Positions 18,945 through 62,990 of a stretch of 64,000 nt of DNA are shown here, in pieces (position 1 is the first letter of the stretch; every line of letters begins with the position of its first letter). Position numbers and translations under genes: made by a program. Location: assembly GCF_021869535.1 (NCBI RefSeq), contig NW_026262701.1:28086001-28150000 (forward strand), written 5' to 3'. A model generated the notes under the pieces. It did not search any database. It worked only from the letters and a program-made list of their open reading frames with translations, and had not been told where the DNA came from. Source of the DNA: Mytilus californianus. Taxonomy: Eukaryota.

Positions 18945-19940
18945 ACCATAAAATTGAGAATGGAAATGGGAAATCTGTCAAAGAGACAACAACCCGACCA
19001 AAGAGCAGATAACAGCCGAAGGCCACCAATGGGTCTTCAACGCAGCGAGAAAATCCCGCACCCGGAGGTGGTCCTCAGTCAGCCCCTAAATAAAATTGTG
19101 TACTGGTTCAGTGAAAATGGACGTCACACTAAGCTCCAAAACATATAAAGGAACTAAAATTAAAAATAAAAAAAACATACAAGACTTACAAAGGCCAGAG
19201 GCTCCTGACTTGGGACAGGTGCAAAAATGCGGCGGGGTTAAACATGTTTTGTAAGATCTCAACCCTCCCCCTATACCTCTAGCCAATGTACAATAAAGAA
19301 ACACATAGTAATGCGCACAGTAAAACTCAATTTAAAAGAAGTCTGAGTGAGATGTCAGAATAGGTAACAAAAGAAACTAAGCAAAATGACAATGATACAT
19401 AAATTAACAAATGGCAGTTACTGACATGCTAGCTCCAGACCTTAATTAAACTGATTGAACGATCATGTCTTCATCATATGAAAATCAGGTACAATCCCTC
19501 CCGTTAGGTGTTTAGTATCATACCATCATAAAATATATGAGAAGAACACAACCCGTATCATGCCAACAACTGGTTTTAGAATAAATGTCTTTATTTCCGA
19601 TGCAAAGACCCTATGAATTAATCAATATTAATACCAAAATATGCAATCCTTAATGATCTGACAACATTATCGTAACTATATCCCTTCCGAATAAGTCTGT
19701 TTAAATGTTTGGTTAGCTTTTGAGGTGAATGCCGACATTTTTGTGCTTTGTAAAGAATATTACCATAAAATGTTGTATGTTAAGTACCTGAACGTATAAG
19801 ATGTCTGCATGTTGATTTATATTTACGAATGATGTCCTTGTACCGATGATAAAATTATGTAAATGTTTTGACTAGTTTGGGATATCGAAAACCCTGGTGT
19901 AATAATTTTTCAGTAATACAGAGATTTCTTTTGTTGAAAT
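18945..19940 (-). mobile_element. PLE RT C-terminus plus 3' region (reverse copy of the 27640-28742 family)
   Basis: 18945 TAAAATTGAGAATGGAAATGGG is the reverse complement of ~28720-28742; colinear back to the KLLHQGF-coding segment at ~19900. Confidence 0.8.
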
Positions 19941-23049: not shown

Positions 23050-24470
23050 CATAAATGTCAGCAATAATGCCACATACATGTCATCAACAATGTCACATAC
23101 ATGTCAACAATGATGTCACATACATGTCAACAACGATGTCACAGACATATAACCAATGGTGTAACATACATGTCAGCAATGAGGTTTCATGATGCTTGAT
23201 GATAGATTAAGTCACATAAATGTCAGCAATGTTGTCACATACATGTTAGTGCTGATGTCGCAAACATGCCAGCAATGATGTCACATACATGTCAGTGATG
23301 ATGTTACATACAATGTCAACAACGATGTCTCATCTCCCAGACATATAACCTTAGCCGTATTTGGCACAACTTTTTGGAACTTTTGGTCCTCAATGCTCTT
23401 CAACTTTGTACATGTTTTGGCTTTCCAACTTTTTTGATCTGAGCGTCACTGGTTAGTCTTGTGTGGACGAAACGCGCGTCTTAAATTTTAAACCTGGTAC
23501 CTTTTGTTAGCTATTATTCGTATGTTTCCCCGTCCTATATGTTCTCCCATTTATTTGCATTGTAGTCCTGTCATGTAATGTTGACATTCTAATGTTATAT
23601 TTAACATTGCCATAAAGGCGGGAGGTTTGGCTAGCCTCAAAACCAGGTTCAACCCACCATTTTTTTCTTAAAATGTCCTGTACCAAGTCAGGAAAATGGC
23701 CATTGTTATATTATAGTTCGTTTCTGTGTGTGTTACATTTTAATGTTGTGTTTCTGTTGTGTCGTAGTTTTCCTCTTATATTTGATGTGTTTCCCTCAGT
23801 TTTAGTTTGTAACCCGGATTTGTTTTTTTCTCAATCGATTTATGAATTTCGAACAGCGGTATACTACTGTTGCCTTTATTTACATGTCGCCAATGTTACA
23901 TGTTACATTGTCAACAATGATGTCACATAATTGTCAACAATGATGTCACATAATTGTCAACTATGATGTCACATGCATGTAAGTATTGATACCACATACA
24001 TGTCAACAATGATGTCACATACACGTCACCAATGATACCCCATACATTAATAATAAAGTCACATACATGTCAGCAACGATGTCACATACATGTCACCAAT
24101 GATGCCACATACATGTCAGCAATAATGTCACATACATGTCAGCATTGATGCTACCCACATATCAGCAATGAAGTCACACACATATCAGTAATGATACCAC
24201 ATATACATTTCACCAATGATGTCACATACATGGTACATGTCAGCAATAATGTCACGAACATGTCAGTAATGATGTCATATGTACATTAGCAATGATGTTA
24301 CATACGTGGCAGCAATGATCTTGTGCACACATGTGAAAGGATGCCATATACATGTCAGCAAGGATCCCCCATACATGTCATCAATTTTATCACATACACG
24401 CCAACAATGATGTCACATACACGTGAGTAATCATGTCACATAAATATTACCAATGATGTCGCATGTATAC
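23050..24470. repeat. Degenerate 23-bp minisatellite (TGTCACATACATGTCAACAATGA), split by an insertion at ~23335-23881
   Basis: Period 23 (23091, 23114); the array resumes at ~23882. Confidence 0.9.
23335..23881 (+). mobile_element. Retrozyme-like segment with degenerate hammerhead (23443-23480) fused to a PLE-type tail
   Basis: GCGTCA-CTGGTTA-GTCT/TGTGT/GGAC-GAAA-CGCGC-GTC: core mutated from CTGATGA and 3' helix-I strand missing. Tail carries the TGTACCAAGTCAGGA box. Confidence 0.65.
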
Positions 24471-27225: not shown

Positions 27226-27639
27226 CGTAAACTAAACTATTCCTCATTGATTCTTGGTGTTAAAAAAAACTTTTAAAAATTTCTTTTTTCTGCTAGTATT
27301 TCAGTAGGTATAGTGTCCGGCTGGGATCGTGTTTTATCGAGCGATTTGATCGAGTGTGACCACGTTTTTTTGAGTAAATATGATCAAAAATGTAACAGAC
27401 TTCCTTTCTGGTAAGACGTAAAACAAGATGCTAGAACCTTATATACAAGATCATAGAAGGTAAATTAGTATTTGTGATAACAAGATATTATCAACCATAC
27501 ATTATTTTGTTTTAAAAACGTTTAATTTAGCCTAACAATGCTTTATTCCAAAATATATATAGATTAAAGCCAGTTTTATACACATACCAATGCAAATGTA
27601 AACGGAAATGCATTCATGGAATCTATATATACTATTTTT

Positions 27640-28742
27640 CATTTCCTATCGTTAATTATCCATTTTTAGATGGTGACGTTCCCTTGTCACCATCTTACGG
27701 TGTTTATATATCTCAACTTGTACGATTCGCTCGTGTATGTAACAATGTTTTAGATTTTAACGAGAGAAATTTATGTATTACTGAAAAATTATTACACCAG
27801 GGTTTTCGATATCACAAACTAGTCAAAACATTTACTAAATTTTATCATCGGTATAAGGACATCATTCGTAAATATAGCTCAACATGCAGACTTCTTATAC
27901 GTTCAGGTATATCACATCCAATTTTTTATGGAAATATTCTTTATAAAGCACAAAAATGTCAGTATTCACCTCTGAAACTAACAAAACCTTTAAATAGACT
28001 TATCAAGAAGGGATATAGTTACGATACTGTTGTCAGGTCATTAAAGATTGCATATTTTGGCGTTAATATTGATTCACTTATAGGGTCTTTGCATCGGCAC
28101 TAAACACATTTATTTAAAAACCAGTTGTTGGCATGACACGGGTTATGTTCTTCTCATATATGTTATGATGGTATGATACTAAACCCCTAACGGGAAGGAT
28201 TGTGCCTGATATTCATATGATGAAGACATAATCTTTCAATCAGTTTAATTGAAGTCTGGAGCTGGCATGTCAGTTAACTGCTAGTAGTCTGTTGTTATTT
28301 ATGTATTATTGTCATTTTGTTTATTTTCTTTGGTTACATCTTCTGACATCAGACTCGGACTTCTCTTGAACTGAATTTTAATGTGCGTATTGTTATGCGT
28401 TTACTTTTCTACATTGGCTAGAGGTATAGGGGGAGGGTTGAGATCTCATAAACATGTTTAACCCCGCCGCATTTTTGCGCCTGTCCCAAGTCAGGAGCCT
28501 CTAGCCTTTGTTAGTCTTGTATTATTTTTAATTTTAGTTTCTTGTGTACAATTTGGAGTTTAGTATGGCGTTCATTATCACTGAACTAGTATATATATTT
28601 GTTTAGGGGCCAGCTGAAGGACGCCTCCGGGTGCGGGAATTTCTCGCTGCATTGAAGACCTGTTGGTGACCTTCTGCTGTTGTCTGTTCTATGGTCGGGT
28701 TGTTGTCTCTTTGACACATTCCCCATTTCCATTCTCAATTTT
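27640..28742 (+). mobile_element. 5'-truncated PLE: RT C-terminal (thumb) ORF plus ~640-nt 3' region
   Basis: FPIVNYPFLDGDVPLSPSYGVYISQLVRFAR..KLLHQGFRYHKLVKTFTKFY; open to the stop at 28103. Confidence 0.85.
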
Positions 28743-41702: not shown

Positions 41703-43070
41703 CAATATATTAAATAAGACCATGACATACAAACATGATATCTATTTACAAACTTTCAAAGCGTATCAGGTTATTTAAACATATACATGTATGTAAATTA
41801 TACATGTACAGTAGTCAACATTGTACATGCATGTGAAAAACACGTGACAATGAATGACATAAGCAGGAAAAATAAAAAACGTGACGTTTCAAATACAATT
41901 ACGATTCATAGATTGAGTTCCAATATCCAGCGACCAATATTCCAGACAGTGAGACGAAAATGTTAATTGTAGTACTATATATATTCAATTGTATTGTATG
42001 ACCCGACCCTAAGGGTTGACTCGGGTATAGAAATACGGTCGTCCCTTGTTCTTCTACCGACCGGCAGTTAACTCCTTGCCAAAGTTGAGTGTCTGTTTGG
42101 CTGTGCGGGATGTATAAATTCTGAGCCACGTCTGGTTACGTTAAATCCGATACATCGCATAGAGAAATAGACATGCTTTCTGCATGTTAAAGAACAATTG
42201 CAACAACTCTATGAGGAGTCCGTATAATACCTGTTGCATTGCAAAATATCTGTCCCTATGCAACATGCTCTATGTTTCTAGTGGCTGTTCAAATTTCCCG
42301 CCCTTCATCCCTGTCGACCCCTACCTTGCAGAACCTACCTGTTGTATGTATTTGTGATTTGTTCTCGTCCCAAACATGCATGAAATAATTGCCACTGGAA
42401 GTATCAATCAATCGATTATATGTCTGCTTATAATTGATGTTCTGTTAGAAGTAAACTGCTGCAATTGTTTGCGCCTGTCCTAAGTCAGGAATCTGATGTT
42501 CAGTAGTTGTCGTTTGTTGATGTGGTTCATAAGTGTTTCTCGTTTCTTGTTTTTTATATAGATTAGATCGTTGGTTTTCCCGTTTGAATGGTTTTACACT
42601 AGTAATTTTGGGACCTTTTATAGCTTGCTGTTCGGTGTGAGCCAAGGCTCCGTGTTGAAGACCGTACTTTGACCTATAATGGTTTACTTTTATAAATTTT
42701 GACTTGGATGGAGAGTTGTCTCATTGGCACTCATACCACATCTTCTTATATCTATGTCATTACAAATAAGGGATCTTAAATGTGAATGGACGTCATATGT
42801 TAATTGAATCTTTCTGTAAAATGAAGGTAGTTTTTCGAATATTATGCTGTGTGGTTTATTACTGAATCCTTAATGCAGTTCAGTCACGTGGGTTCAGTTT
42901 TGTTTGTGCTACCGACTTTGTGGGAAATCTGGCCTTTTAACGGCCTTAAGCCGAACTGTATTTGTATTTACATCCACATTTAAAAGGGCAAATATGTATT
43001 AATCTAGTTTCAATGTATTTGCAAAACAATCATACATTCAAGTTGTTTTAATAGTTTATTTGGCACTCAC

Positions 43071-43814
43071 CATCGGCATGATAATGAACTGACATCCTAA
43101 GCCTATACATGGTGCTAGCGGACGCTTGATATTTTCTTTAACGACCTCAAGGTCTAACTTTGCCCCGAAAGCAAGTGTAATGAAAATCATGAAAACGTAA
43201 ATAATGACCCTGAAAGCAGTATCAATAGTTCTCATGGGTCGTAGGATTATAACTGGTACTTTTGTTACATCTACCATATCTTCAGTTATATTATGTTGTA
43301 GGTCAAGGTCATTATAGCTATATAAATTAAACGTTATAAAAGTTCTCCCAAGCAAATCTGAATTCGTATATAAAGTGTGTGTCCCTTGTACAACATAACG
43401 TTCTTTTTCTTTCTGTAATTTATCACCAACTGAATACGACGGACCAACAACAGAACCGTTGGTCAGTGACACGAGAGGCATAAGTACCAAAAGTCTGTTT
43501 CTGCAATCAATAATGACGTCATTAGTTTCAACATTCACAAGGTTAGCGTCGTCAGCTTTAGCTCTCATGACATATTTTAAAGTCTCATCGTCACACTGTA
43601 CTGTATAATTGAAATATTGAGGTGCACGGTCTTTTCCAATGAATACCATAACAACACCATGTGGTGGGGGTCCTTTTACACTTAGAATTCCCGATGCATT
43701 AATCATGTCTAGTGGCACCATCGGGTCCCCCATAGACATATCTGAAACTGCCCGTGACAAACTAAGAGGTATCAACATATGATGAAGTAAAATGATTTTG
43801 CATGACATATCCAT
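43071..43814 (-). CDS. SLC10: SLC10-like gene 1, coding exon 1 (signal peptide, extracellular domain, first TM helices)
   Basis: Start ATG at 43814 (or 43808) is inferred. ..GRTFITFN..FGAKLDL..KRPLAPCIGLGCQFIIMPM|GTGAGT, phase 0. Spliced CDS 744+175+677 = 1596 nt, 531 aa. Confidence 0.9.
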
Positions 43815-46419
43815 TATGCTAGTTTGCAATGTTCTGATTAAATGACAAACCTCATTCAAGCACTGGTAATATAACTACACCAGAATTATTTACATATTTA
43901 ACGGGTCATTGCTTCTTATCATTGACATAAATGTGAGGTCTTTGTTCTTAATCCGTTTTGTATCACTCAAATAATATTTCTTCTCTCTTACTTTCAGTTC
44001 AGGTATATTATGAAGTCTATTGCTTTAAAATTTTATGATGTTAAAATAATTGAATTAAAATTTGTCGGCAAATGTCACAAAGAATAAAAACAGCCAAAGG
44101 TCATGGAGATTATGAAATGAATAGGGTAATTTGAATCAGTTGTTGGTCGTTTAAAGTACTTTCAAACTAAACATGCAAGTTCAGTATGAGAGAAAAACTA
44201 ACTATAAATTAATACAATAGGTAGATCATGTAAAGAGGGTTTGACTGGGATCAGTGGCGAGCATTCAAATATCTATTCTAGCAAAGGGGATTTAAGTCAA
44301 GAATGATGTAATATAATTTTATTTGGTACATGTAATATATAACTACTCTATTTCTGAAGAAATATAAAAAAATTATCGTTTAAAAAAATGAATTGACTTG
44401 CATTAAATCTAAAATTGGGTTCACAGACATTCGTGTACTTCAAAAGATAACCAGAGTACTGATTTTGACTAATCACGGTAAACGTTTTCCAATTATAACG
44501 GTAACGGTTAAATAATTGAACCTCTGACGGATAATGATAATTTGACGACTCACAAAATAAATTTAATCAAGTTGACGCTAACGATAGTCGAAAATTACCA
44601 TTTGACTCCTGACGCTAAAAGACATTCCAACCCGCTTGAGAGACCACTAGGATCACTTATTACAACACAGAGGCGATCTGACACATGAAAAGACCAATAT
44701 ATATATATATATCTGCTTTATATTTTCATTGCATTGAATTTTAATTTTCTATTTCTATTTTTATTTTCATTTTATTTTAGTATCATCCCTCAACAATATA
44801 TGATACAACATTACACTACCCCTCAAAAGGTTGTTCCAAGGGTTCTTAGCGTGCAGAGAGCGTGGCACTCTCTCCACGCCGGCCATAGGATTTAACGTCA
44901 CAATTCTGACAGATGTGACTGCGAATTTATACGTCCCGCACAGCCAAATGAATACCCCACAAGGGTGTACTGCCAGTGAAGACCATATCTCTATACCCCT
45001 AGTCAACCCTAGGAGTTGTCGATACAGTGAAGTCAGCACATATTGGCTACATCATTTCAAGTATTCACATCAATAGATATACGAATAGAGAGAGATATTT
45101 AAGTAGACATGGTTTGTCATTGAGTTTTATACCAAGTTAACATAGTTTGAAACAAATTTGGTTATATATAAATATAATGATACATAAAAAAGGACTAAAA
45201 TGTTAAAATCTATAAAATCAAAAAAGATGTATGGCCAGTTTCCCCTGAAATCATTTCACGCTAGGTATGTTTTTTTAATGTTTTATCGTCGTTTCTATTA
45301 CAGCATCACAGCTTGTTGTGAGTTTTAGGTTGTAACAAAATAATGTTGTATATCTGAATATATTACCTAGGTATTAATGCTTTTATCTTTTATCTAGACT
45401 GTTGTGAATCACTTTTTTGTATGGAAAAACTTCAGAAAGGGGCAAAAAATAAAAATTGTAATAAATAAATTAATATTTTCAACAATCAAAGCAATGAATG
45501 AATTACCTCATTTCCCATAAAAGTACAGTTACATATAGTTATTAAGAACATATATCTGAACATAGCTATAAGCCACAATTATTACATACACGTGTTTCAC
45601 ATTTATAACTTTGATAAATTTATATGATATTTTTAATATTAAGATTTTTAATGAGTTAAATAGTTGATCAAATACATATTTTAAAGGATTTGACCAACAG
45701 TAATGCATGTGCTAAAAATTTCTTTCTTTCTAATTCAAATGTTGTACAATTCATAATGAAATGATACTCATCACCAATGTCGTTTGAGTCAGAGAGACGG
45801 GAGACTGTATTCTCTCTGTAAACCCTGCCATCTCACAGACTCAATCGGCATATAATGACTACTTCATCTATATTTGCAGAACCTAGATGATATGCTTATT
45901 CTGTTGATAATCCCGAGTTTATTAAACATGCTGAATACAGGCAAATAAAGCTAATAATCACAGTCAATATTGCCTCACCTTAGACATAACTGTATTGGTA
46001 TAAATTGGAAAAAGAGATGATTTCAACTTTGTCAAAAAATTTATTTCCCTTTCAGTTTAGATGGCGATGTTTTTTTGCCTTAACCTTACATTTACACAAA
46101 AGTTACTTTTATAGTGTTACAGATACAGGTATTTCTCAACCTCCTTTCAATTGTAATATAGTAACAAGCACTACAAACAATGAAAAATGATATATTTAAA
46201 CTCGGGGAAAATTCTAACATAGTTTCTTTCCTTCGATGATCTGACAATTTAAAAGTTCACTGGCTCTAAATAAACTCATCATAGATACCAGGATTGAAAT
46301 TTTATCTAACAAATACTGACGATTTTAATTAAATTTTATGATGATACTTTATGAAAGCTGTGAGAACTCAACCAACAACTATACGACTACCTTAGCTAGC
46401 TTTCTGTAATAGCAAGTAC

Positions 46420-48044: not shown

Positions 48045-48400
48045 ATCAGTCACCGAGGGTATCATCAGCTCAGTAGTCAGTGCTGACATGATTTAAAAAA
48101 AAAACCTTTTTAAAATTGCCCGTTTAAGAATTAAAAATTATAAAGAAACTAAGGTTTCAACTCCCTCAAGCAAAACTGACCTTAGAAGGTTTTGGCTATT
48201 TTCTAGGTCATTTTTGTTCTTATAGCTCTTATAGCTCTTTAGCTGTTTCGGTTGTTATACATTCCTGGCTTTCAAATATCTGCTTTGAGCGTTCCTGCTG
48301 GCGGTAAAACCAGAGAAGTGCTTCGGACGCATGAAACTTATTCCAGGAAAGTGCCTCGGATGCATGAAATTTTAAAAGTGTTGTCTTCATTTTTTAAATG
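48045..48400 (+). mobile_element. ~350-nt retrozyme-like monomer (type 2) with degenerate hammerhead at ~48288-48330
   Basis: GCGTTC-CTGCTGG-CGGTAAAACCA-GAGA-AGTGCT-TC-GGACGC; upstream body resembles 23340-23440 and 34650-34810. Confidence 0.55.
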
Positions 48401-58504: not shown

Positions 58505-59079
58505 GAACAATGCCTTTATGGTTATTTACATTGGGCCGGGAATTTTCTACGAGAGCCGAAACAGAAATGCCATATCTGGAAATTGTTACAACATTATTGA
58601 TCCTTCTGATCCCACTCCTGATCGGGGTATTTATACAGTACAAACTAACACGGGTTCACAAGTTCATGTTAAAAATTATTTTACCAATCACGATTGTCTC
58701 ATTTATTCAACTTGCCGTCACTGGACTCTACTCTAATTGGTACGTTTATGAAATGTTCAACGCTAAAATATTCCCATTAAGTGGTAATATAATTTCTGGT
58801 TTGATTTCCTGGATTGCTAGGCTACCCTAGACATGTGTGAAAACTATCGCAATTGAAACAGGTTTGCAAAATACTGGAATTGCAATTTTGGTAATCATGT
58901 TTGCTTTTCCACAACCAGAAGGTCTTATTGCCGTTGTTGTACCATTGGCTACTGGTATAATGACGCAACTTCCACTGATTGCTGTATCGACTCCATACTT
59001 AATATACACAAGGTGTAATGGGAAACGAGATGAACCTGAGTCTGCTAATGAAGAGATCGATATAAACAATTCTAAGTGA
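58505..59079 (+). pseudogene. SLC10: SLC10-like gene 2, exon 3 (TGG->TAG stop at 58828-58830; 6-codon deletion)
   Basis: TTTCAG|GA ACA ATG; RLP*TCVKTIAIETGLQN versus RLPWQRVKTIAIETGMQN in gene 1; KIF------PLSG versus KIVLAGCLLPYFG. Confidence 0.9.
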
Positions 59080-61849
59080 TTGTCTGTGGAATTATTGTAT
59101 ACTTATTTTTTTCTAATAAAGTATAGAACTAGTAGATATGCTGACCCTCGGTTGCTCAGTCTTTATTTTTATGTGTTATTTTGTAGACTGTTTGTCTTTT
59201 CGTATTTTTTTTACTTTTAGACCATAGTGTTGTGTTTTGCATCGACTTATGATTTTTAATTGTCCCCTTGGTATGTCCTGTCTTATATTTCCCTAGTAAA
59301 ACAAATACAAATAATATTTTTTTACTTAAACAAATATTTGATGTCATATGTCTTATTTTTTTACAATGACATTTCCTTCAAAGTTTTCTTTGCCTTTTGT
59401 TTACCGTTTAGTATATGAAATAAGGTCCAGCATGCAACACTATTGTAAAGAATAGCATTGAAAACAAAACTTGTCCCGCTGACTAGTGAATTCGTCTGTC
59501 ATGTTTTCAAGTTCAAAATCCCTTTGTATTTATACTGCCTTCAAAATTATTTCTAAAACTGACCTTGGGGTTATTTTGCAATTGGGGTCAACATCATAAA
59601 TAATACTTTGAACTACATGTCAATGGTCTATATTCGTTTCCTATTCATTAAGTTTGAGTTCTGTTGCTTTCTGATATATGTTTGCTTTGAACTTATATTT
59701 TATAATGAGTTTCTTTGAATAAAAATGTCCTCAACAAAGATTCAGTTAAACACTACAATTATAGCACCAAATTCACAAGGCTATTTGTTCAGTCGAAATA
59801 TTTGTCAATACGATTTTATAACATCTTCTTCATATATTACCATCTTAAATTCAGTATCGTTGCGCAAATCTTCACCTTTATAAATGTATAAAGTGTACAA
59901 AAAAACACCAATATTAAAAAAAGGAAACAGTAAGTACAAGTATCAGAAATAAATATATCGGATAACAGACATTTTTCATCAGTATACTGAAGAAGGATAT
60001 CTGTTATCCTCAATATTTATTATGGTTTTTTTTATATACTGGTCAAAGATTTTGATGAATTAGAGGAAATATTATGGTATAGCAACATCATATTTCATAC
60101 AGAACGTAACCAAGATTTAGCGTGCAATTATATATTATATTATATTGCACTACCACGAATAAAGCTTCAAATTTGTGACGTTAGCCTCAGTGAAAATCAG
60201 TTTTTTTAAAAGTCAATTAAACCTCATATTCACGGACACAAAAGACAGAAACTGTTTTATAAAATTTTCGGAGAAAAAAATTGCATTTAAGGTAGATCCA
60301 TTCTGGTCATGTTGCAAAATACATGTTCGGTTTAAATTTTTTTTATCAAGTTTCATTCAATATTTAACAGAAACATCTGAAACTTAAAGTTTAAAGATTA
60401 AACTATCAAACAATTAAGTGTCGTTAAATGTATTATTTTTTTTTTAAATTCAAGGGCAGATAGTTCTATTGTATCTGATATAACAATTTGTGTTTGTTTT
60501 GAAATTTCAAGAAAACAAGGCTCATGACCCCTATTGTTATTTGATATTTCAAATGTATTCATGAAAAGCAATTCTCTCATATTGAATTTTAACAAATTAT
60601 ATCGTTTAAAGTTTCCTTAATAAAGAGAAATTTATTTTCATCTTTATAACGCATATCAAATAACTGTGATTTCGTAAATTTCAATGTATTTTTCAAAACA
60701 AAAAAAAAATCAAGGTCCGTGACCCCCAGTTTTTAAATTGAAATTGGAAAGTACATTGACCCAGAAGCCTTTTATAGAAGTTTAAGGCAACCTTAATGAC
60801 AATTATTTACCAATACCAAAGGTACGTTTAAAACATTTTACCATATACAAATACATGTAAAAGCACGTGCTGTTAAGTGCGGTGAATATCACTTTTTTCA
60901 GGTGCATTTCTTTTATTTATTCAAAATCCCAATTTATATATAAAAATAAAAATCTATAAAAAAAACTAATGCCAATATGGAATGATATATCGTATTTCAC
61001 TAATGCGAAGAAAGCTTCAAATTAGTGACGTCATCAGTAACAAAAATATGCTGTAAACAGATTTTCAAGCTTTGCTATCACTATTGATGCAATAAATCGA
61101 TCATGGCTATGTATACACTACAAGGGTAATTGCATACAGTTGCATGAATATTGGTAACCATAATTCCTCGTAGAGTACACATTACACTCGCATGCTTGAG
61201 TAGTATAAAAATCTACTCGGGACAATTTCCATCAATATTCATGCAATAACCTCATCATATCGTATTACTTAATCTTACCTTTTATCAGTATCGTAGCACA
61301 GAATTTGTAAAACCAGATGTTAATTGCATTAGAAGAAAACACTTCACGCAGATTGTATTACAAAATTAACTTATTACAGTTCGATGAACATTTGAAATAA
61401 GCCTTAACCGGAACTATCCATGCCATGAGTATGGAAAGTCAAAATATGATTATAACGTGGAGAGCTATGGAGTTTAATGGCCTTCAAAAGGAAGGACCAA
61501 CAACATACAATGTCAACTCGTCTGAGGGAACAGCAACCTGATAAATTGTCTGCTGCATGAACGAATATCTTTTCTTTTAAAATCATTTATTATACCATAG
61601 CGGTAGTTGTGATCAGAATTACTTTCTATAGTGCAATACATCAGGTTCAAAGCTACGGGCATTACATTACTTCGTACCAGTCTAATTTTACGTTGTTGAA
61701 CAATATTCAAAGCGAGATAATTCTAGTGTTATAATCTGTAAGATAATTAAGCTTTGCTTAACATGTGCAAGAATATCCTGCTTCGCATGCAACATCTGTA
61801 AGGGCTGAATTCGATCGATAAGGGGAAAAATTCTAGAAATGAATAATTT

Positions 61850-62990
61850 AAGTTTGGTGACTATGTTGAACGCATCTATCCAACCGAACTTGAGAAATAA
61901 AGGATATAACAGATACAGTTAAATCTGTCTCACATCTTGACTTACATTAAATAAACTCATCATAGATACCAGGATTGAAATTTTGTACGTCAGACGTGCG
62001 TTTCGTCTAAAAAGACTCATCAGTGACGCTTGAATAAAAACATATTAAGATATTGACAATAAGAGTCGGTTGAGAACAAAACTTTACGACAATAGAGATG
62101 ATTTCAGCTTTCCAATTGTGAACTGCCAATTTCGATGTAGCAACATTGTAGTAGAACCTGCATATGGAGTATACATCTACCAGTCGATACAAATATCCAG
62201 AGCCTGTCTTTCCTATCATGATTTCCTAGATAGAGGATTGCTGCTTACAAGGAAGCTATTAAATTTAAACGACAGTAGTTTACCGAATTTCAAATCTCGA
62301 AATCTTTAAGGAAGAGACAAATCAGGGTAACAAACAAAAAGAGAGGGAATCACATGAACTCCAAAAGGAGCAAAAACGGGTTCGTCAACAGGGTACGCGT
62401 CTCTTGCTATGCATGTATCAACCGCCATGCGAATTCACACTCGGTGAAAATGTCACAATCGGTAACAAATCAGTGAAATAACAGATCAGACGATCATATT
62501 GGTATTCTAAAGATCAATTTCAGTCGGTCTGTGTTCTTCCTAATAACTCTGTTGGAGTAGTTTATGTGTTTTGACCCAAACATTTTAAGAAGTGAAGTTG
62601 AAGTCCTCCTTTCGAAAATATTATGGACTAAATCACGAGTTCGTTGACTGTTATGGAATATATGTTTCGCAGATGACGACGGATATGTTCCAATTGTCGT
62701 TATCACAATCCCGTCCTCTTTTCCTCGAATTTGACATCACCGAGTTTGTACTTCTATGAGCAACACGACTAGTGCCACATGTAAAGCAAGATTTGGTTTA
62801 CCTTCCCGGACACCGATGACCACCCACATTTGTTTGTTTGGTTCGTATCAGTCTTAATTTGTCCAAGTTGTGTTTTGTATACTGTTGTTTGTCTTTTGTT
62901 TGTTTTTTCGTTTTTACTATGGCGTTGTCAGTTTGTAATCGACTTTTGAATTTGAATATCTCTTTGGAATCTTCCGCTTCTGTTTTGGAA
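61850..62990 (+). mobile_element. PLE RT C-terminal region plus tail, with two nested insertions
   Basis: ERIYPTELE..DLH | KLYDNRDDFSFPIVN..AYGVYI..DFLDRGLLLTRKLLN | VKLKSSFRKYYG..VSQMTTDMF. Confidence 0.85.
61987..62029 (-). ncRNA. Minimal type-I hammerhead ribozyme with intact catalytic core (retrozyme fragment ~61950-62045)
   Basis: GCGUCA-CUGAUGA-GUCU/UUUU/AGAC-GAAA-CGCAC-GUC|-UGACGU: helix I has 5 Watson-Crick pairs plus 1 GU, helix II has 4 bp, all core nucleotides canonical. Confidence 0.8.

What the first reader, a model, noticed from the sequence alone, without database searches (positions are those of the whole stretch)
61987..62029. Apparently intact self-cleaving hammerhead ribozyme on the - strand
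It reads 5'-GCGUCA CUGAUGA GUCU UUUU AGAC GAAA CGCAC GUC|UGACGU-3'. The core is canonical (C3-A9, G12-A15.1, U16.1, C17), helices I and II are formed, and stem III is reduced to one base pair beyond A15.1-U16.1 with a near-palindrome ACGCACGU (ACGCGCGU in the 23472 copy). This is the minimal type-I design described for PLEs and metazoan retrozymes. Predicted cleavage is after position 61993. The G->A change should weaken dimer-dependent activity, making a natural test allele. A core-less downstream fragment of the same family is at ~46265-46305.
Basis: partly seen in the sequence, partly recalled or inferred. Interest (0 to 1): 0.75.

Follow-up and report, generated by a model that had tools for sequence, protein, structure and literature searches.

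The report
Truncated solo copy of mussel retrozyme hammerhead
The flagged stretch is a genuine hammerhead self-cutting RNA motif, but it sits in a 101-base, front-truncated, apparently silent stray copy of a mussel mobile-element family (retrozymes) already published in 2020, so it is ordinary.

Summary
The motif is at 61987-62029 on the minus strand, exactly as described. Its catalytic core is intact, helix I has 6 bp, helix II 4 bp and helix III 2 bp. Rfam Hammerhead_1 scores it 30.5 bits (E = 0.0015 for the whole window).

It is not a free-standing ribozyme gene. It lies in a 101-bp insertion (61948-62048) that interrupts a decayed reverse-transcriptase ORF on the opposite strand.

Its sequence matches the published Mytilus galloprovincialis retrozyme hammerhead (Cervera & de la Peña 2020). 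That family has about 5000 copies, 350-390-bp tandem units, cleavage shown in vitro and abundant circRNAs.

The window copy keeps only the last ~100 nt of a ~355-nt unit. It ends at the same 3' terminus as every other solo copy examined, about 45 nt past the cut site, which is the pattern of a 5'-truncated retro-copy.

The one raw RNA run laid shows no reads on its unique flanks and no pile of ends at the cut site. The G-to-A change in the helix III palindrome is predicted to abolish the double-hammerhead dimer, but many other family copies share it.

The scan reached the same verdict for another copy in this genome (s1-312177).

Verdict: real motif, known family, dead-end copy; low interest.

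The parts
61987..62029 (-). Type I hammerhead motif. Helix I is GCGUCA/UGACGU (6 bp), the core is CUGAUGA...GAAA, helix II is GUCU/AGAC with a UUUU loop, and helix III is A-U plus C-G with loop GCAC. C17 is at 61993.
   Evidence: Sequence; Rfam RF00163 at 30.5 bits, E = 1.4e-5 locally and 0.0015 window-wide.
61992..61993 (-). Predicted scissile bond, 3' of C17 at 61993.
   Evidence: Follows from the hammerhead GUC|N rule applied. No pile of RNA ends was seen here (table 6).
61948..62048 (-). A 101-bp, 5'-truncated solo retro-copy of the Mytilus retrozyme unit: 19 nt upstream of the hammerhead, the 43-nt hammerhead, and a 39-nt 3' tail ending ...GATGAGTTTATTTA.
   Evidence: It interrupts the plus-strand RT ORF between residues 59 and 61 of P0002. 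Paralogous empty-site joints 61947->62047/62048 appear in run X18, and the 62048 one also in X21. It is 93.6% identical to L009 over 61948-62040. Family sequence continues past 62048 in other copies (loose ends).
61850..61947 (+). Left part of the decayed RT-like transposon ORF into which the hammerhead copy inserted (...ERIYPTELE / EIKDITDTVKSVSHLDLH).
   Evidence: tblastn of P0002 and P0047; translation.
62049..62237 (+). Continuation of the same RT-like ORF (DIDNKSRLRTKLYDNRDDFSFPIVN...FLDRGL).
   Evidence: 304 relatives with E <= 1e-3.
62568..62699 (+). C-terminal piece of the same RT-like ORF, separated by a second, unidentified ~330-bp interruption (62238-62567).
   Evidence: tblastn of P0003 residues 95-138.
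23328..23517 (+). A ~190-bp 5'-truncated copy of the other tail subfamily. Its hammerhead (23442-23481) is dead: the core reads CTGGTTA and the 3' strand of helix I is deleted. It ends at the same family 3' terminus.
   Evidence: unit positions 177-352 of 355.
46267..46303 (-). A 37-nt piece made up only of the family's 3' terminus. It is 100% identical to 61948-61984 and ends at the same last base.
48049..48080 (+). A 32-nt fragment matching positions 36-67 of the retrozyme unit (the part with no ribozyme).
   Evidence: 90.6% identity, E = 1.7e-6.

Best explanation
The motif is the hammerhead of the known Mytilus non-LTR retrozyme family. Here it is carried by a 101-bp, 5'-truncated solo retro-copy (61948-62048, minus strand) that landed inside an older RT-encoding transposon remnant.

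Inferred mechanism. A retrozyme RNA, or an RNA sharing its 3' tail, was reverse-transcribed at a chromosomal nick. Copying started from the family's fixed 3' terminus (...GAGTTTATTTA, about 45 nt past the cleavage site) and stopped after about 100 nt.

Consequences for this copy. It keeps a sequence-intact catalytic core. It lacks the rest of the ~355-nt unit, has no second hammerhead nearby, and carries a G-to-A change that breaks the helix III palindrome. Helix III is only 2 bp in a monomer, so hammerheads of this architecture are thought to cut best as two-copy dimers. This copy is therefore most likely a silent, non-propagating relic.

Status of each step. Shown: the motif, the insertion, family membership, the shared 3' end, and the predicted loss of the dimer fold. 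Inferred: the reverse-transcription mechanism and the inactivity.
For: Motif.

Insertion: tblastn places P0002 residues 42-59 at 61894-61947 and residues 61-123 at 62049-62237, so about 101 bp intervene with only one residue missing. Contigs of run X18 join 61947 directly to 62047 or 62048, and a few RNA reads of X21 show the 62048 joint; these are paralogous empty sites.

Family identity: the cloned M. galloprovincialis retrozyme and its consensus, in the supplement of PMC7229834, read ...GAGCGTCACTGATGAGTCTTTTGTAGACGAAACGCGCGTC|TGGCGTA...CTATGATGAGTTTATTTG.... The same paper reports ~5000 copies, 350-390-bp repeats, kobs of about 0.1 per min and circRNAs. Locus L011 is a tandem array of this family with a 355-bp unit.

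Fixed 3' end with variable 5' ends: against a natural unit dimer, the solo copies start at unit positions 149, 177, 197, ~255, ~272 and ~318. BLAST matches stop at unit positions 345-355, and the sequences themselves run on to within a few bases of the terminus. None crosses into the next unit. In the presumed DNA run X18, 522 contig matches break at 61948-61950 with no consensus beyond (agreement 0.38).

Silence: in RNA run X21 depth is 0 on the unique flank 61750-61834, 98% of the reads on the element run on into unlike sequence, and no ends pile up at 61992/61993.

Dimer: for the G-variant L009 the double hammerhead is the minimum-energy dimer (-29.5 kcal/mol, P = 0.81). For the window sequence it is not (-20.7 against a minimum of -26.1 kcal/mol, P = 0.00).
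Against: The core and all three helices are intact, so weak monomeric cleavage cannot be excluded if the minus strand is ever transcribed. The published consensus ribozyme cut at about 0.1 per min in a single-repeat construct.

Only one raw RNA run was examined, with about 6% of it read, and from an unknown tissue.

The insertion junctions are defined only to within about 3 nt, and no clear target-site duplication is visible.

The empty sites are paralogous copies of the host transposon, not an orthologous or allelic empty site.

The sample of solo copies read base by base is small: 7, plus contig-end statistics.
Confidence: 0.8

Rival explanations
1. It is a functional, locally acting self-cleaving ribozyme. 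It would process a minus-strand transcript at this locus.
For: The catalytic core is intact and helices I and II are formed. Rfam E = 0.0015 window-wide. The helix I U-A pair at 61990 is stronger than the family's U.G pair.
Against: No reads fall on the unique flanks in RNA run X21. It is a solo copy with no second hammerhead within reach; the only other motif in the window is 38 kb away and dead. The helix III palindrome is broken, and the predicted dimer probability is 0.00. The monomer hammerhead fold (-6.4 kcal/mol) loses to an alternative fold (-10.2 kcal/mol). The copy is a random nested insertion, antisense, inside a dead transposon ORF.
Confidence: 0.07
2. It is the 5'-truncated 3' end of an autonomous Penelope-like element whose tail carries the same hammerhead, rather than a copy of the non-autonomous retrozyme.
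For: PLEs carry hammerheads near their 3' ends, in pLTRs, and leave abundant short 3'-end copies and 30-40-bp 'tails' (PMC8557442). Vertebrate retrozymes are sister to PLE pLTRs (bioRxiv 10.64898/2026.07.22.740005). The fixed 3' end with variable 5' truncation is what a linear element with a defined 3' end would give.
Against: All 101 nt, including the 19 nt upstream of the hammerhead, align with retrozyme units (L009, L011, L019, and by eye the published clone). No family copy seen here runs upstream into an RT/GIY-YIG ORF; the longest, L011, continues into further retrozyme units. With 101 nt the two sources cannot strictly be told apart.
Confidence: 0.12
3. It is a chance match to the hammerhead consensus in AT-rich DNA.
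For: The score is below Rfam's gathering threshold (30.5 against 34).
Against: E = 0.0015 for the window. The flanks are homologous to a published ribozyme-bearing family. Confirmed family members score equally below threshold.
Confidence: 0.01

Closest known systems
Mytilus galloprovincialis non-LTR retrozymes with type I hammerheads (HHR A/B; Cervera & de la Peña, NAR 2020, PMC7229834)
   Same: The ribozyme sequence is the same: GAGCGTCA CTGATGA GTCTTTTGTAGAC GAAAC GCGC GTC TGGCGT in the published clone and consensus. The upstream T-rich stretch and the downstream ...CCTGRTATCTATGATGAGTTTATTT tail also match.
   Different: The published elements are 350-390-bp units in tandem that yield circRNAs. 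This is a single 101-bp terminal piece. It differs by G-to-A in the helix III loop, one base fewer in loop 2, and U-A instead of U.G in helix I.
Canonical metazoan type I hammerheads of newt/axolotl satellite 2 and Schistosoma (Rfam RF00163; Forster et al. 1988, as cited in PMC4209133)
   Same: Helix I has 6 bp and helix II has 4 bp. Helix III is very short, with a palindromic ACGCGCGU segment that lets two copies form an extended helix III. The Rfam consensus reads GACGAAACGcgCGUC.
   Different: The flanking sequences are unrelated. The window copy has lost the palindrome (ACGCACGU).
Minimal hammerheads (min-HHR) in pLTRs of Penelope-like elements (Cervera & de la Peña 2014, PMC4209133)
   Same: Both depend on dimers through a palindromic 15.2-16.2 region, and both are associated with retroelements that leave 5'-truncated copies.
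   Different: As described in that paper, min-HHRs lack helix III and loop 3, and helix II is larger (6 bp) with a bulged base at its 5' end. Here helix III plus a 4-nt loop is present and helix II has 4 bp. The motif is not in a pLTR flanking a sense RT-EN ORF.
Solo ('monomer') retrozyme copies in vertebrate genomes (Li, Clavereau & Pollet 2026 preprint)
   Same: They are dispersed single copies, interpreted as immobile offspring of active tandem retrozymes.
   Different: That study counts near-full-length monomers in vertebrates. This copy covers less than 30% of a unit in a mussel.

Membership tests
Hammerhead ribozyme, type I (Rfam RF00163) | Conserved core: C3-U-G-A-N-G-A9, G12-A-A14, A15.1-U16.1, and H17 at the cut site | tested here: met
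   One search shows CUGAUGA ... GAAA ... GUC with no deviation.
Hammerhead ribozyme, type I (Rfam RF00163) | Three helices around the core, with helix I open-ended (type I topology) | tested here: met
   Helix I has 6 bp, helix II 4 bp and helix III 2 bp. Across 10 family copies 95.7% of cells are paired, against 18-40% when the partners are slid; there are no compensatory changes.
Hammerhead ribozyme, type I (Rfam RF00163) | Covariance-model score at or above the curated gathering score (34 bits) | tested here: not met
   The score is 30.5 bits. Family members with the published active sequence score 31.2-33.3 bits, so the threshold misses the whole family.
Hammerhead ribozyme, type I (Rfam RF00163) | Site-specific self-cleavage | not testable with these tools
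   No pile of RNA ends at 61992/61993 in run X21. The reads there come almost entirely from other copies, so this is uninformative for this copy.
Mytilus non-LTR retrozyme (Cervera & de la Peña 2020) | Sequence homology to the published unit across the ribozyme and its flanks | tested here: met
   Published clone and consensus text compared by eye. Computed identity is 86-94% to family loci L009, L011, L016 and L019.
Mytilus non-LTR retrozyme (Cervera & de la Peña 2020) | Tandem repeats of ~350-390 bp, each with a hammerhead | tested here: not met
   This is a single 101-bp copy with no tandem repeat here. It is therefore a fragment derived from the family, not a functional retrozyme.
Mytilus non-LTR retrozyme (Cervera & de la Peña 2020) | Expression as self-processed linear or circular RNA | tested here: inconclusive
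   Family RNA is present in X21, but depth is 0 on this locus's unique flanks. Only one run was laid and about 6% of it was read.
PLE min-HHR (Cervera & de la Peña 2014) | No helix III or loop 3, a larger (6 bp) helix II with a bulged base at its 5' end, and location in the pLTRs of an RT-GIY-YIG element | tested here: not met
   Helix III of 2 bp plus a 4-nt loop is present and helix II has 4 bp. The adjacent RT remnant is on the opposite strand and is interrupted by the copy.

The most novel reading that the evidence does not exclude
Solo and truncated copies of the mussel retrozyme share one precise 3' terminus (...GAGTTTATTTA/C). It lies about 45 nt downstream of the hammerhead cut site and inside the sequence that is continuous in tandem units and circRNAs. 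This would mean that reverse transcription of these elements starts at a specific internal site of the circular or multimeric RNA, as a PLE-type 3' end does, and not at the ribozyme-generated end. If so, the element is a linear PLE-tail derivative, and the terminus marks where the partner reverse transcriptase is recruited. The common G/A polymorphism in the helix III palindrome would then be a natural series for testing dimer-dependent cleavage.
Probability: 0.35. Interest if true: 0.45.

Novelty: already known. Interest (0 to 1): 0.15.

Why it matters
This copy matters little in itself. It is one of thousands of relics of a published family, and the scan has already reached the same verdict on another copy in this genome (s1-312177).

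Two by-products may help people working on retrozyme mobilisation. First, the copies show a fixed 3' end and variable 5' truncation, which argues for target-primed reverse transcription from a defined site rather than from the ribozyme cut. Second, a common natural G/A variant is predicted to switch the double-hammerhead fold off. Both concern the family rather than this locus, and both need a genome-wide census and bench assays.

There is also a practical lesson for scans. Rfam's gathering threshold for RF00163 misses this entire experimentally validated family, whose members score 31-33 bits against a threshold of 34.

Tried and rejected
- The Rfam gathering scan of the window was blank. The motif appears only with E-value thresholds.
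Later patterns found only this one intact core in the window.
- Pfam gave nothing for the RT-like fragment or its relatives P0002, P0003 and P0047. The host transposon is therefore identified only by the YIDD-containing relatives and by SECIS-like elements next to sister copies. 'Naiad-like' is an inference.
- A look-up of earlier findings by sequence returned nothing. The operators warn that such a blank means nothing.
- Tandem Repeats Finder missed the 355-bp array in L011. It was seen by BLAST and by eye.
- Covariation gave no independent support: 0 compensatory pairs among 10 young copies.
- Single-sequence MFE folding does not recover the hammerhead fold, even for consensus members. It cannot separate active from inactive copies.
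- I looked for a target-site duplication. Only an ambiguous ACAT is present at both junctions, so I make no claim.
- I considered the motif part of a sense PLE tail next to the RT remnant. I rejected this because the ORF is on the opposite strand and is split by the insertion.
- I considered an HHR-like motif on the complementary strand of the L011 unit (CTGGTGA...GACGAAACGTC). I dropped it because the published clone does not conserve it.
- The second 330-bp interruption (62238-62567) showed no informative repeats.

Full report
**1.

The minus strand of 62029..61987 reads GCGTCA CTGATGA GTCT TTTT AGAC GAAA CGCAC GTC TGACGT. In hammerhead numbering:
- The core C3-A9 (CUGAUGA), G12-A14 and A15.1 (GAAA), U16.1 and C17 are all canonical.
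- Helix I has 6 bp (GCGUCA/UGACGU, with a terminal G.U).
- Helix II has 4 bp with a UUUU loop.
- Helix III is A15.1-U16.1 plus C15.2-G16.2, closed by the loop GCAC.
- C17 is at 61993, so the scissile bond lies between 61993 and 61992.

Rfam's Hammerhead_1 model (RF00163) aligns end to end at 30.5 bits. The E-value is 1.4e-5 on a 601-nt slice and 0.0015 on the whole window. The default gathering scan was blank because the curated cut-off is 34 bits. Six relatives from elsewhere, some identical in the ribozyme to the published active sequence, score only 25.9-33.3 bits. The sub-threshold score is therefore a family trait. No other intact core exists in the window.

**2. What carries the motif**

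The ORF at 62070-62309 on the plus strand has hundreds of relatives. Longer relatives such as P0002 contain a YIDD reverse-transcriptase box.

tblastn places the protein as follows:
- P0002 residues 28-59 at 61850-61947.
- P0002 residues 61-123 at 62049-62237.
- The C-terminus (P0003 residues 95-138) at 62568-62699.

About 101 bp (61948-62048) therefore interrupt a decayed RT ORF with only one residue missing, and the hammerhead lies inside this insertion on the opposite strand. Public contigs and a few RNA reads from the same species join 61947 directly to 62047/62048. These are copies of the host transposon without the insertion (tables 5 and 5c). They are paralogous, not allelic, empty sites. 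The junctions are good to about 3 nt, and I see no convincing target-site duplication.

**3. Which family**

Earlier notes of this scan say the genome is a Mytilus mussel. The supplement of Cervera & de la Peña 2020 (PMC7229834) prints a cloned M. galloprovincialis retrozyme and a consensus. Both contain ...TTTTGGATTTCGAGCGTCACTGATGAGTCTTTTGTAGACGAAACGCGCGTC TGGCGTA...TCCTGATATCTATGATGAGTTTATTTG.... This is the same ribozyme and the same flanks as the window copy.

That paper reports:
- About 5000 such hammerheads (HHR A 2,880 and HHR B 1,681 motifs).
- Repeats of 350-390 bp.
- Co-transcriptional cleavage at about 0.1 per min.
- Abundant circRNAs in gonad and mantle.

A pattern scan of metagenome contigs returned six loci of this family: L001, L009, L011, L016, L019 and L021. 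L009 is 93.6% identical to the window copy over 61948-62040. L011 is a tandem array with a 355-bp unit. Family membership at the sequence level is therefore firm.

The architecture is what Cervera & de la Peña 2014 call the canonical metazoan type I hammerhead: helix I 6 bp, helix II 4 bp, helix III 1-2 bp with a small palindromic loop (PMC4209133). It is not their PLE min-HHR.

**4. Anatomy of the copy**

I compared the copies against a dimer of the natural L011 unit, defined so that it ends at ...CTATTTAC.
- The solo copies begin at very different unit positions. BLAST gives 149 (second L016 copy), 177 (window 23345), 197 (L009) and ~272 (first L016 copy).
- I estimate ~255 for window 62048 and ~318 for window 46303 from each copy's length back from the shared terminus.
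- BLAST matches end at unit positions 345-355. The sequences themselves run on to within a few bases of the terminus, and beyond it the flanks differ. None crosses into the next unit.
- The window copy and the 37-nt piece at 46267-46303 are identical up to the last base ...GATGAGTTTATTTA and diverge immediately after. L009 ends the same way.
- In the presumed DNA run X18, 522 contig matches break at 61948-61950 with no consensus beyond (agreement 0.38).
- In the probable RNA contig sets X1 and X2, the sequence beyond that point tends toward the next part of the retrozyme unit (...GACCCAGTGGTTG on the plus strand), though the consensus agreement is low (0.42-0.43) (table 7).
- On the other side, contigs that run past 62048 continue with the family's upstream sequence (AAAGGCCAAATAAAGTAC on the plus strand). 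The window copy is therefore truncated at 62048.

A fixed 3' end with variable 5' truncation is the signature of target-primed reverse transcription. The terminus lies about 45 nt downstream of the ribozyme cut (44 nt in the L011 unit), so the ends of genomic copies are not set by ribozyme cleavage. [quoted passage not shown] That view remains an inference here.

**5. Is this copy active?**

Transcription. In the one raw RNA run available (X21, about 6% read), depth on the unique flank 61750-61834 is zero. Of the reads on the element, 98% continue into unlike sequence, so they come from other copies. The dominant source is a dead copy with core CTAAAGA, and no pile of ends marks 61992/61993. 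The strand bias is 684 against 174 first mates. This would mean that family RNA is mostly ribozyme-sense if the library is of the usual stranded type, which I could not verify.

Folding.
- The monomer hammerhead fold of the window sequence costs -6.4 kcal/mol, against an alternative minimum of -10.2 kcal/mol. The same is true of consensus members, so this does not discriminate.
- For the G-variants L009, L019 and L021, the minimum-energy homodimer is exactly the double hammerhead with an 8-bp trans helix III (-29.5 kcal/mol). For L009 the probability of that helix is 0.81.
- For the window sequence, the double-hammerhead structure is worth only -20.7 kcal/mol against a minimum of -26.1 kcal/mol. 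Its probability is 0.00.
- A heterodimer of the window sequence with a G-variant gives a probability of 0.05.
- The helix III duplex alone is -13.3 (G/G), -7.9 (A/G) and -3.1 (A/A) kcal/mol.

However, the A is not private. At 61997, only 55-74% of the laid family depth in three contig sets carries the consensus G (table 3). These sets are biased toward sequences similar to this copy.

Covariation across 10 copies is nil, with pairs simply conserved, as expected for a young family.

**6. Verdict**

The stretch is a solo, 5'-truncated, apparently silent relic of a published mussel retrozyme family, nested antisense in a dead RT-encoding transposon. It lies about 2.9 kb beyond an SBF/SLC10-like coding region on the other strand.

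An earlier follow-up in this scan reached the same reading for another copy (s1-312177). Others described larger hammerhead arrays with PLE-type insertion scars (s1-302474, s1-318079).

Interest is low. The only mildly new points are at family level: the fixed 3' terminus internal to the circular unit, and a common palindrome-breaking variant.

Noticed in passing
window 28155-28219 (+) and 19475-19539 (-): SECIS_1-like matches (31.7 and 27.7 bits, both below the gathering score of 35). Each lies just downstream of an RT-like ORF copy (27636-27878 +, 19983-19798 -) related to the transposon that hosts the hammerhead insertion. This fits the selenoprotein-coding Naiad Penelope-like elements described in bivalves (PMC8557442).
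   Followed up: partly
window 62238-62567: A second interruption of ~330 bp in the same RT remnant, between residues 88 and 95 of P0003. It has no match elsewhere in the window and no clear terminal repeats.
   Followed up: partly
window 58510-59079 (+): An SBF / sodium-bile-acid-symporter-like coding region (Pfam PF01758, E = 2.8e-7) with an in-frame TAG at 58828-58830. This could be a pseudogene, an exon boundary or an assembly issue. Another SBF-like N-terminal piece lies on the opposite strand at 43056-43859.
   Followed up: no
window 48049-48080 (+): An isolated 32-nt fragment (GTCACCGAGGGTATCATCAGCTCAGTAGTCAG) matching positions 36-67 of the retrozyme unit, far from any hammerhead.
   Followed up: no
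L005, L007, L008, L013, L014, L022, L023, L025, L029, L035, L038 (metagenome contigs): A second, unrelated group of animal-type type I hammerheads (consensus approximately CCTACGCACTG CTGATGAG GGGCAATTACCCC GAAACGCGCGTC CAGTGCTGG) with the same ACGCGCGT helix III palindrome. L014 and L029 each hold two copies about 1-1.35 kb apart.
   Followed up: no
Read laying on window 61750-62250, run X18 (tables 5 and 5c): 'Going-back' joints from 62040 to 61948/61949 with 10-23 nt between them. They indicate that elsewhere in the genome 5'-truncated copies of this family sit head to tail in short partial tandems, as described for PLE insertions.
   Followed up: no
Read-laying run X21 (RNA), loose ends at 61949 and 62013: Most RNA reads on the element come from one other copy. 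That copy has a dead core (CTAAAGA, and GAAAA instead of GAAAC) but shares the A at the helix III position, and it appears embedded in an expressed transcript.
   Followed up: no
L016 1727-1876 (+) and 2583-2732 (-): Two family copies of different tail subfamilies lie in opposite orientation on one 3.3-kb contig. One has core CTGATCA (dead). The other is truncated about 20-25 nt upstream of the hammerhead, close to where the window copy is truncated.
   Followed up: no
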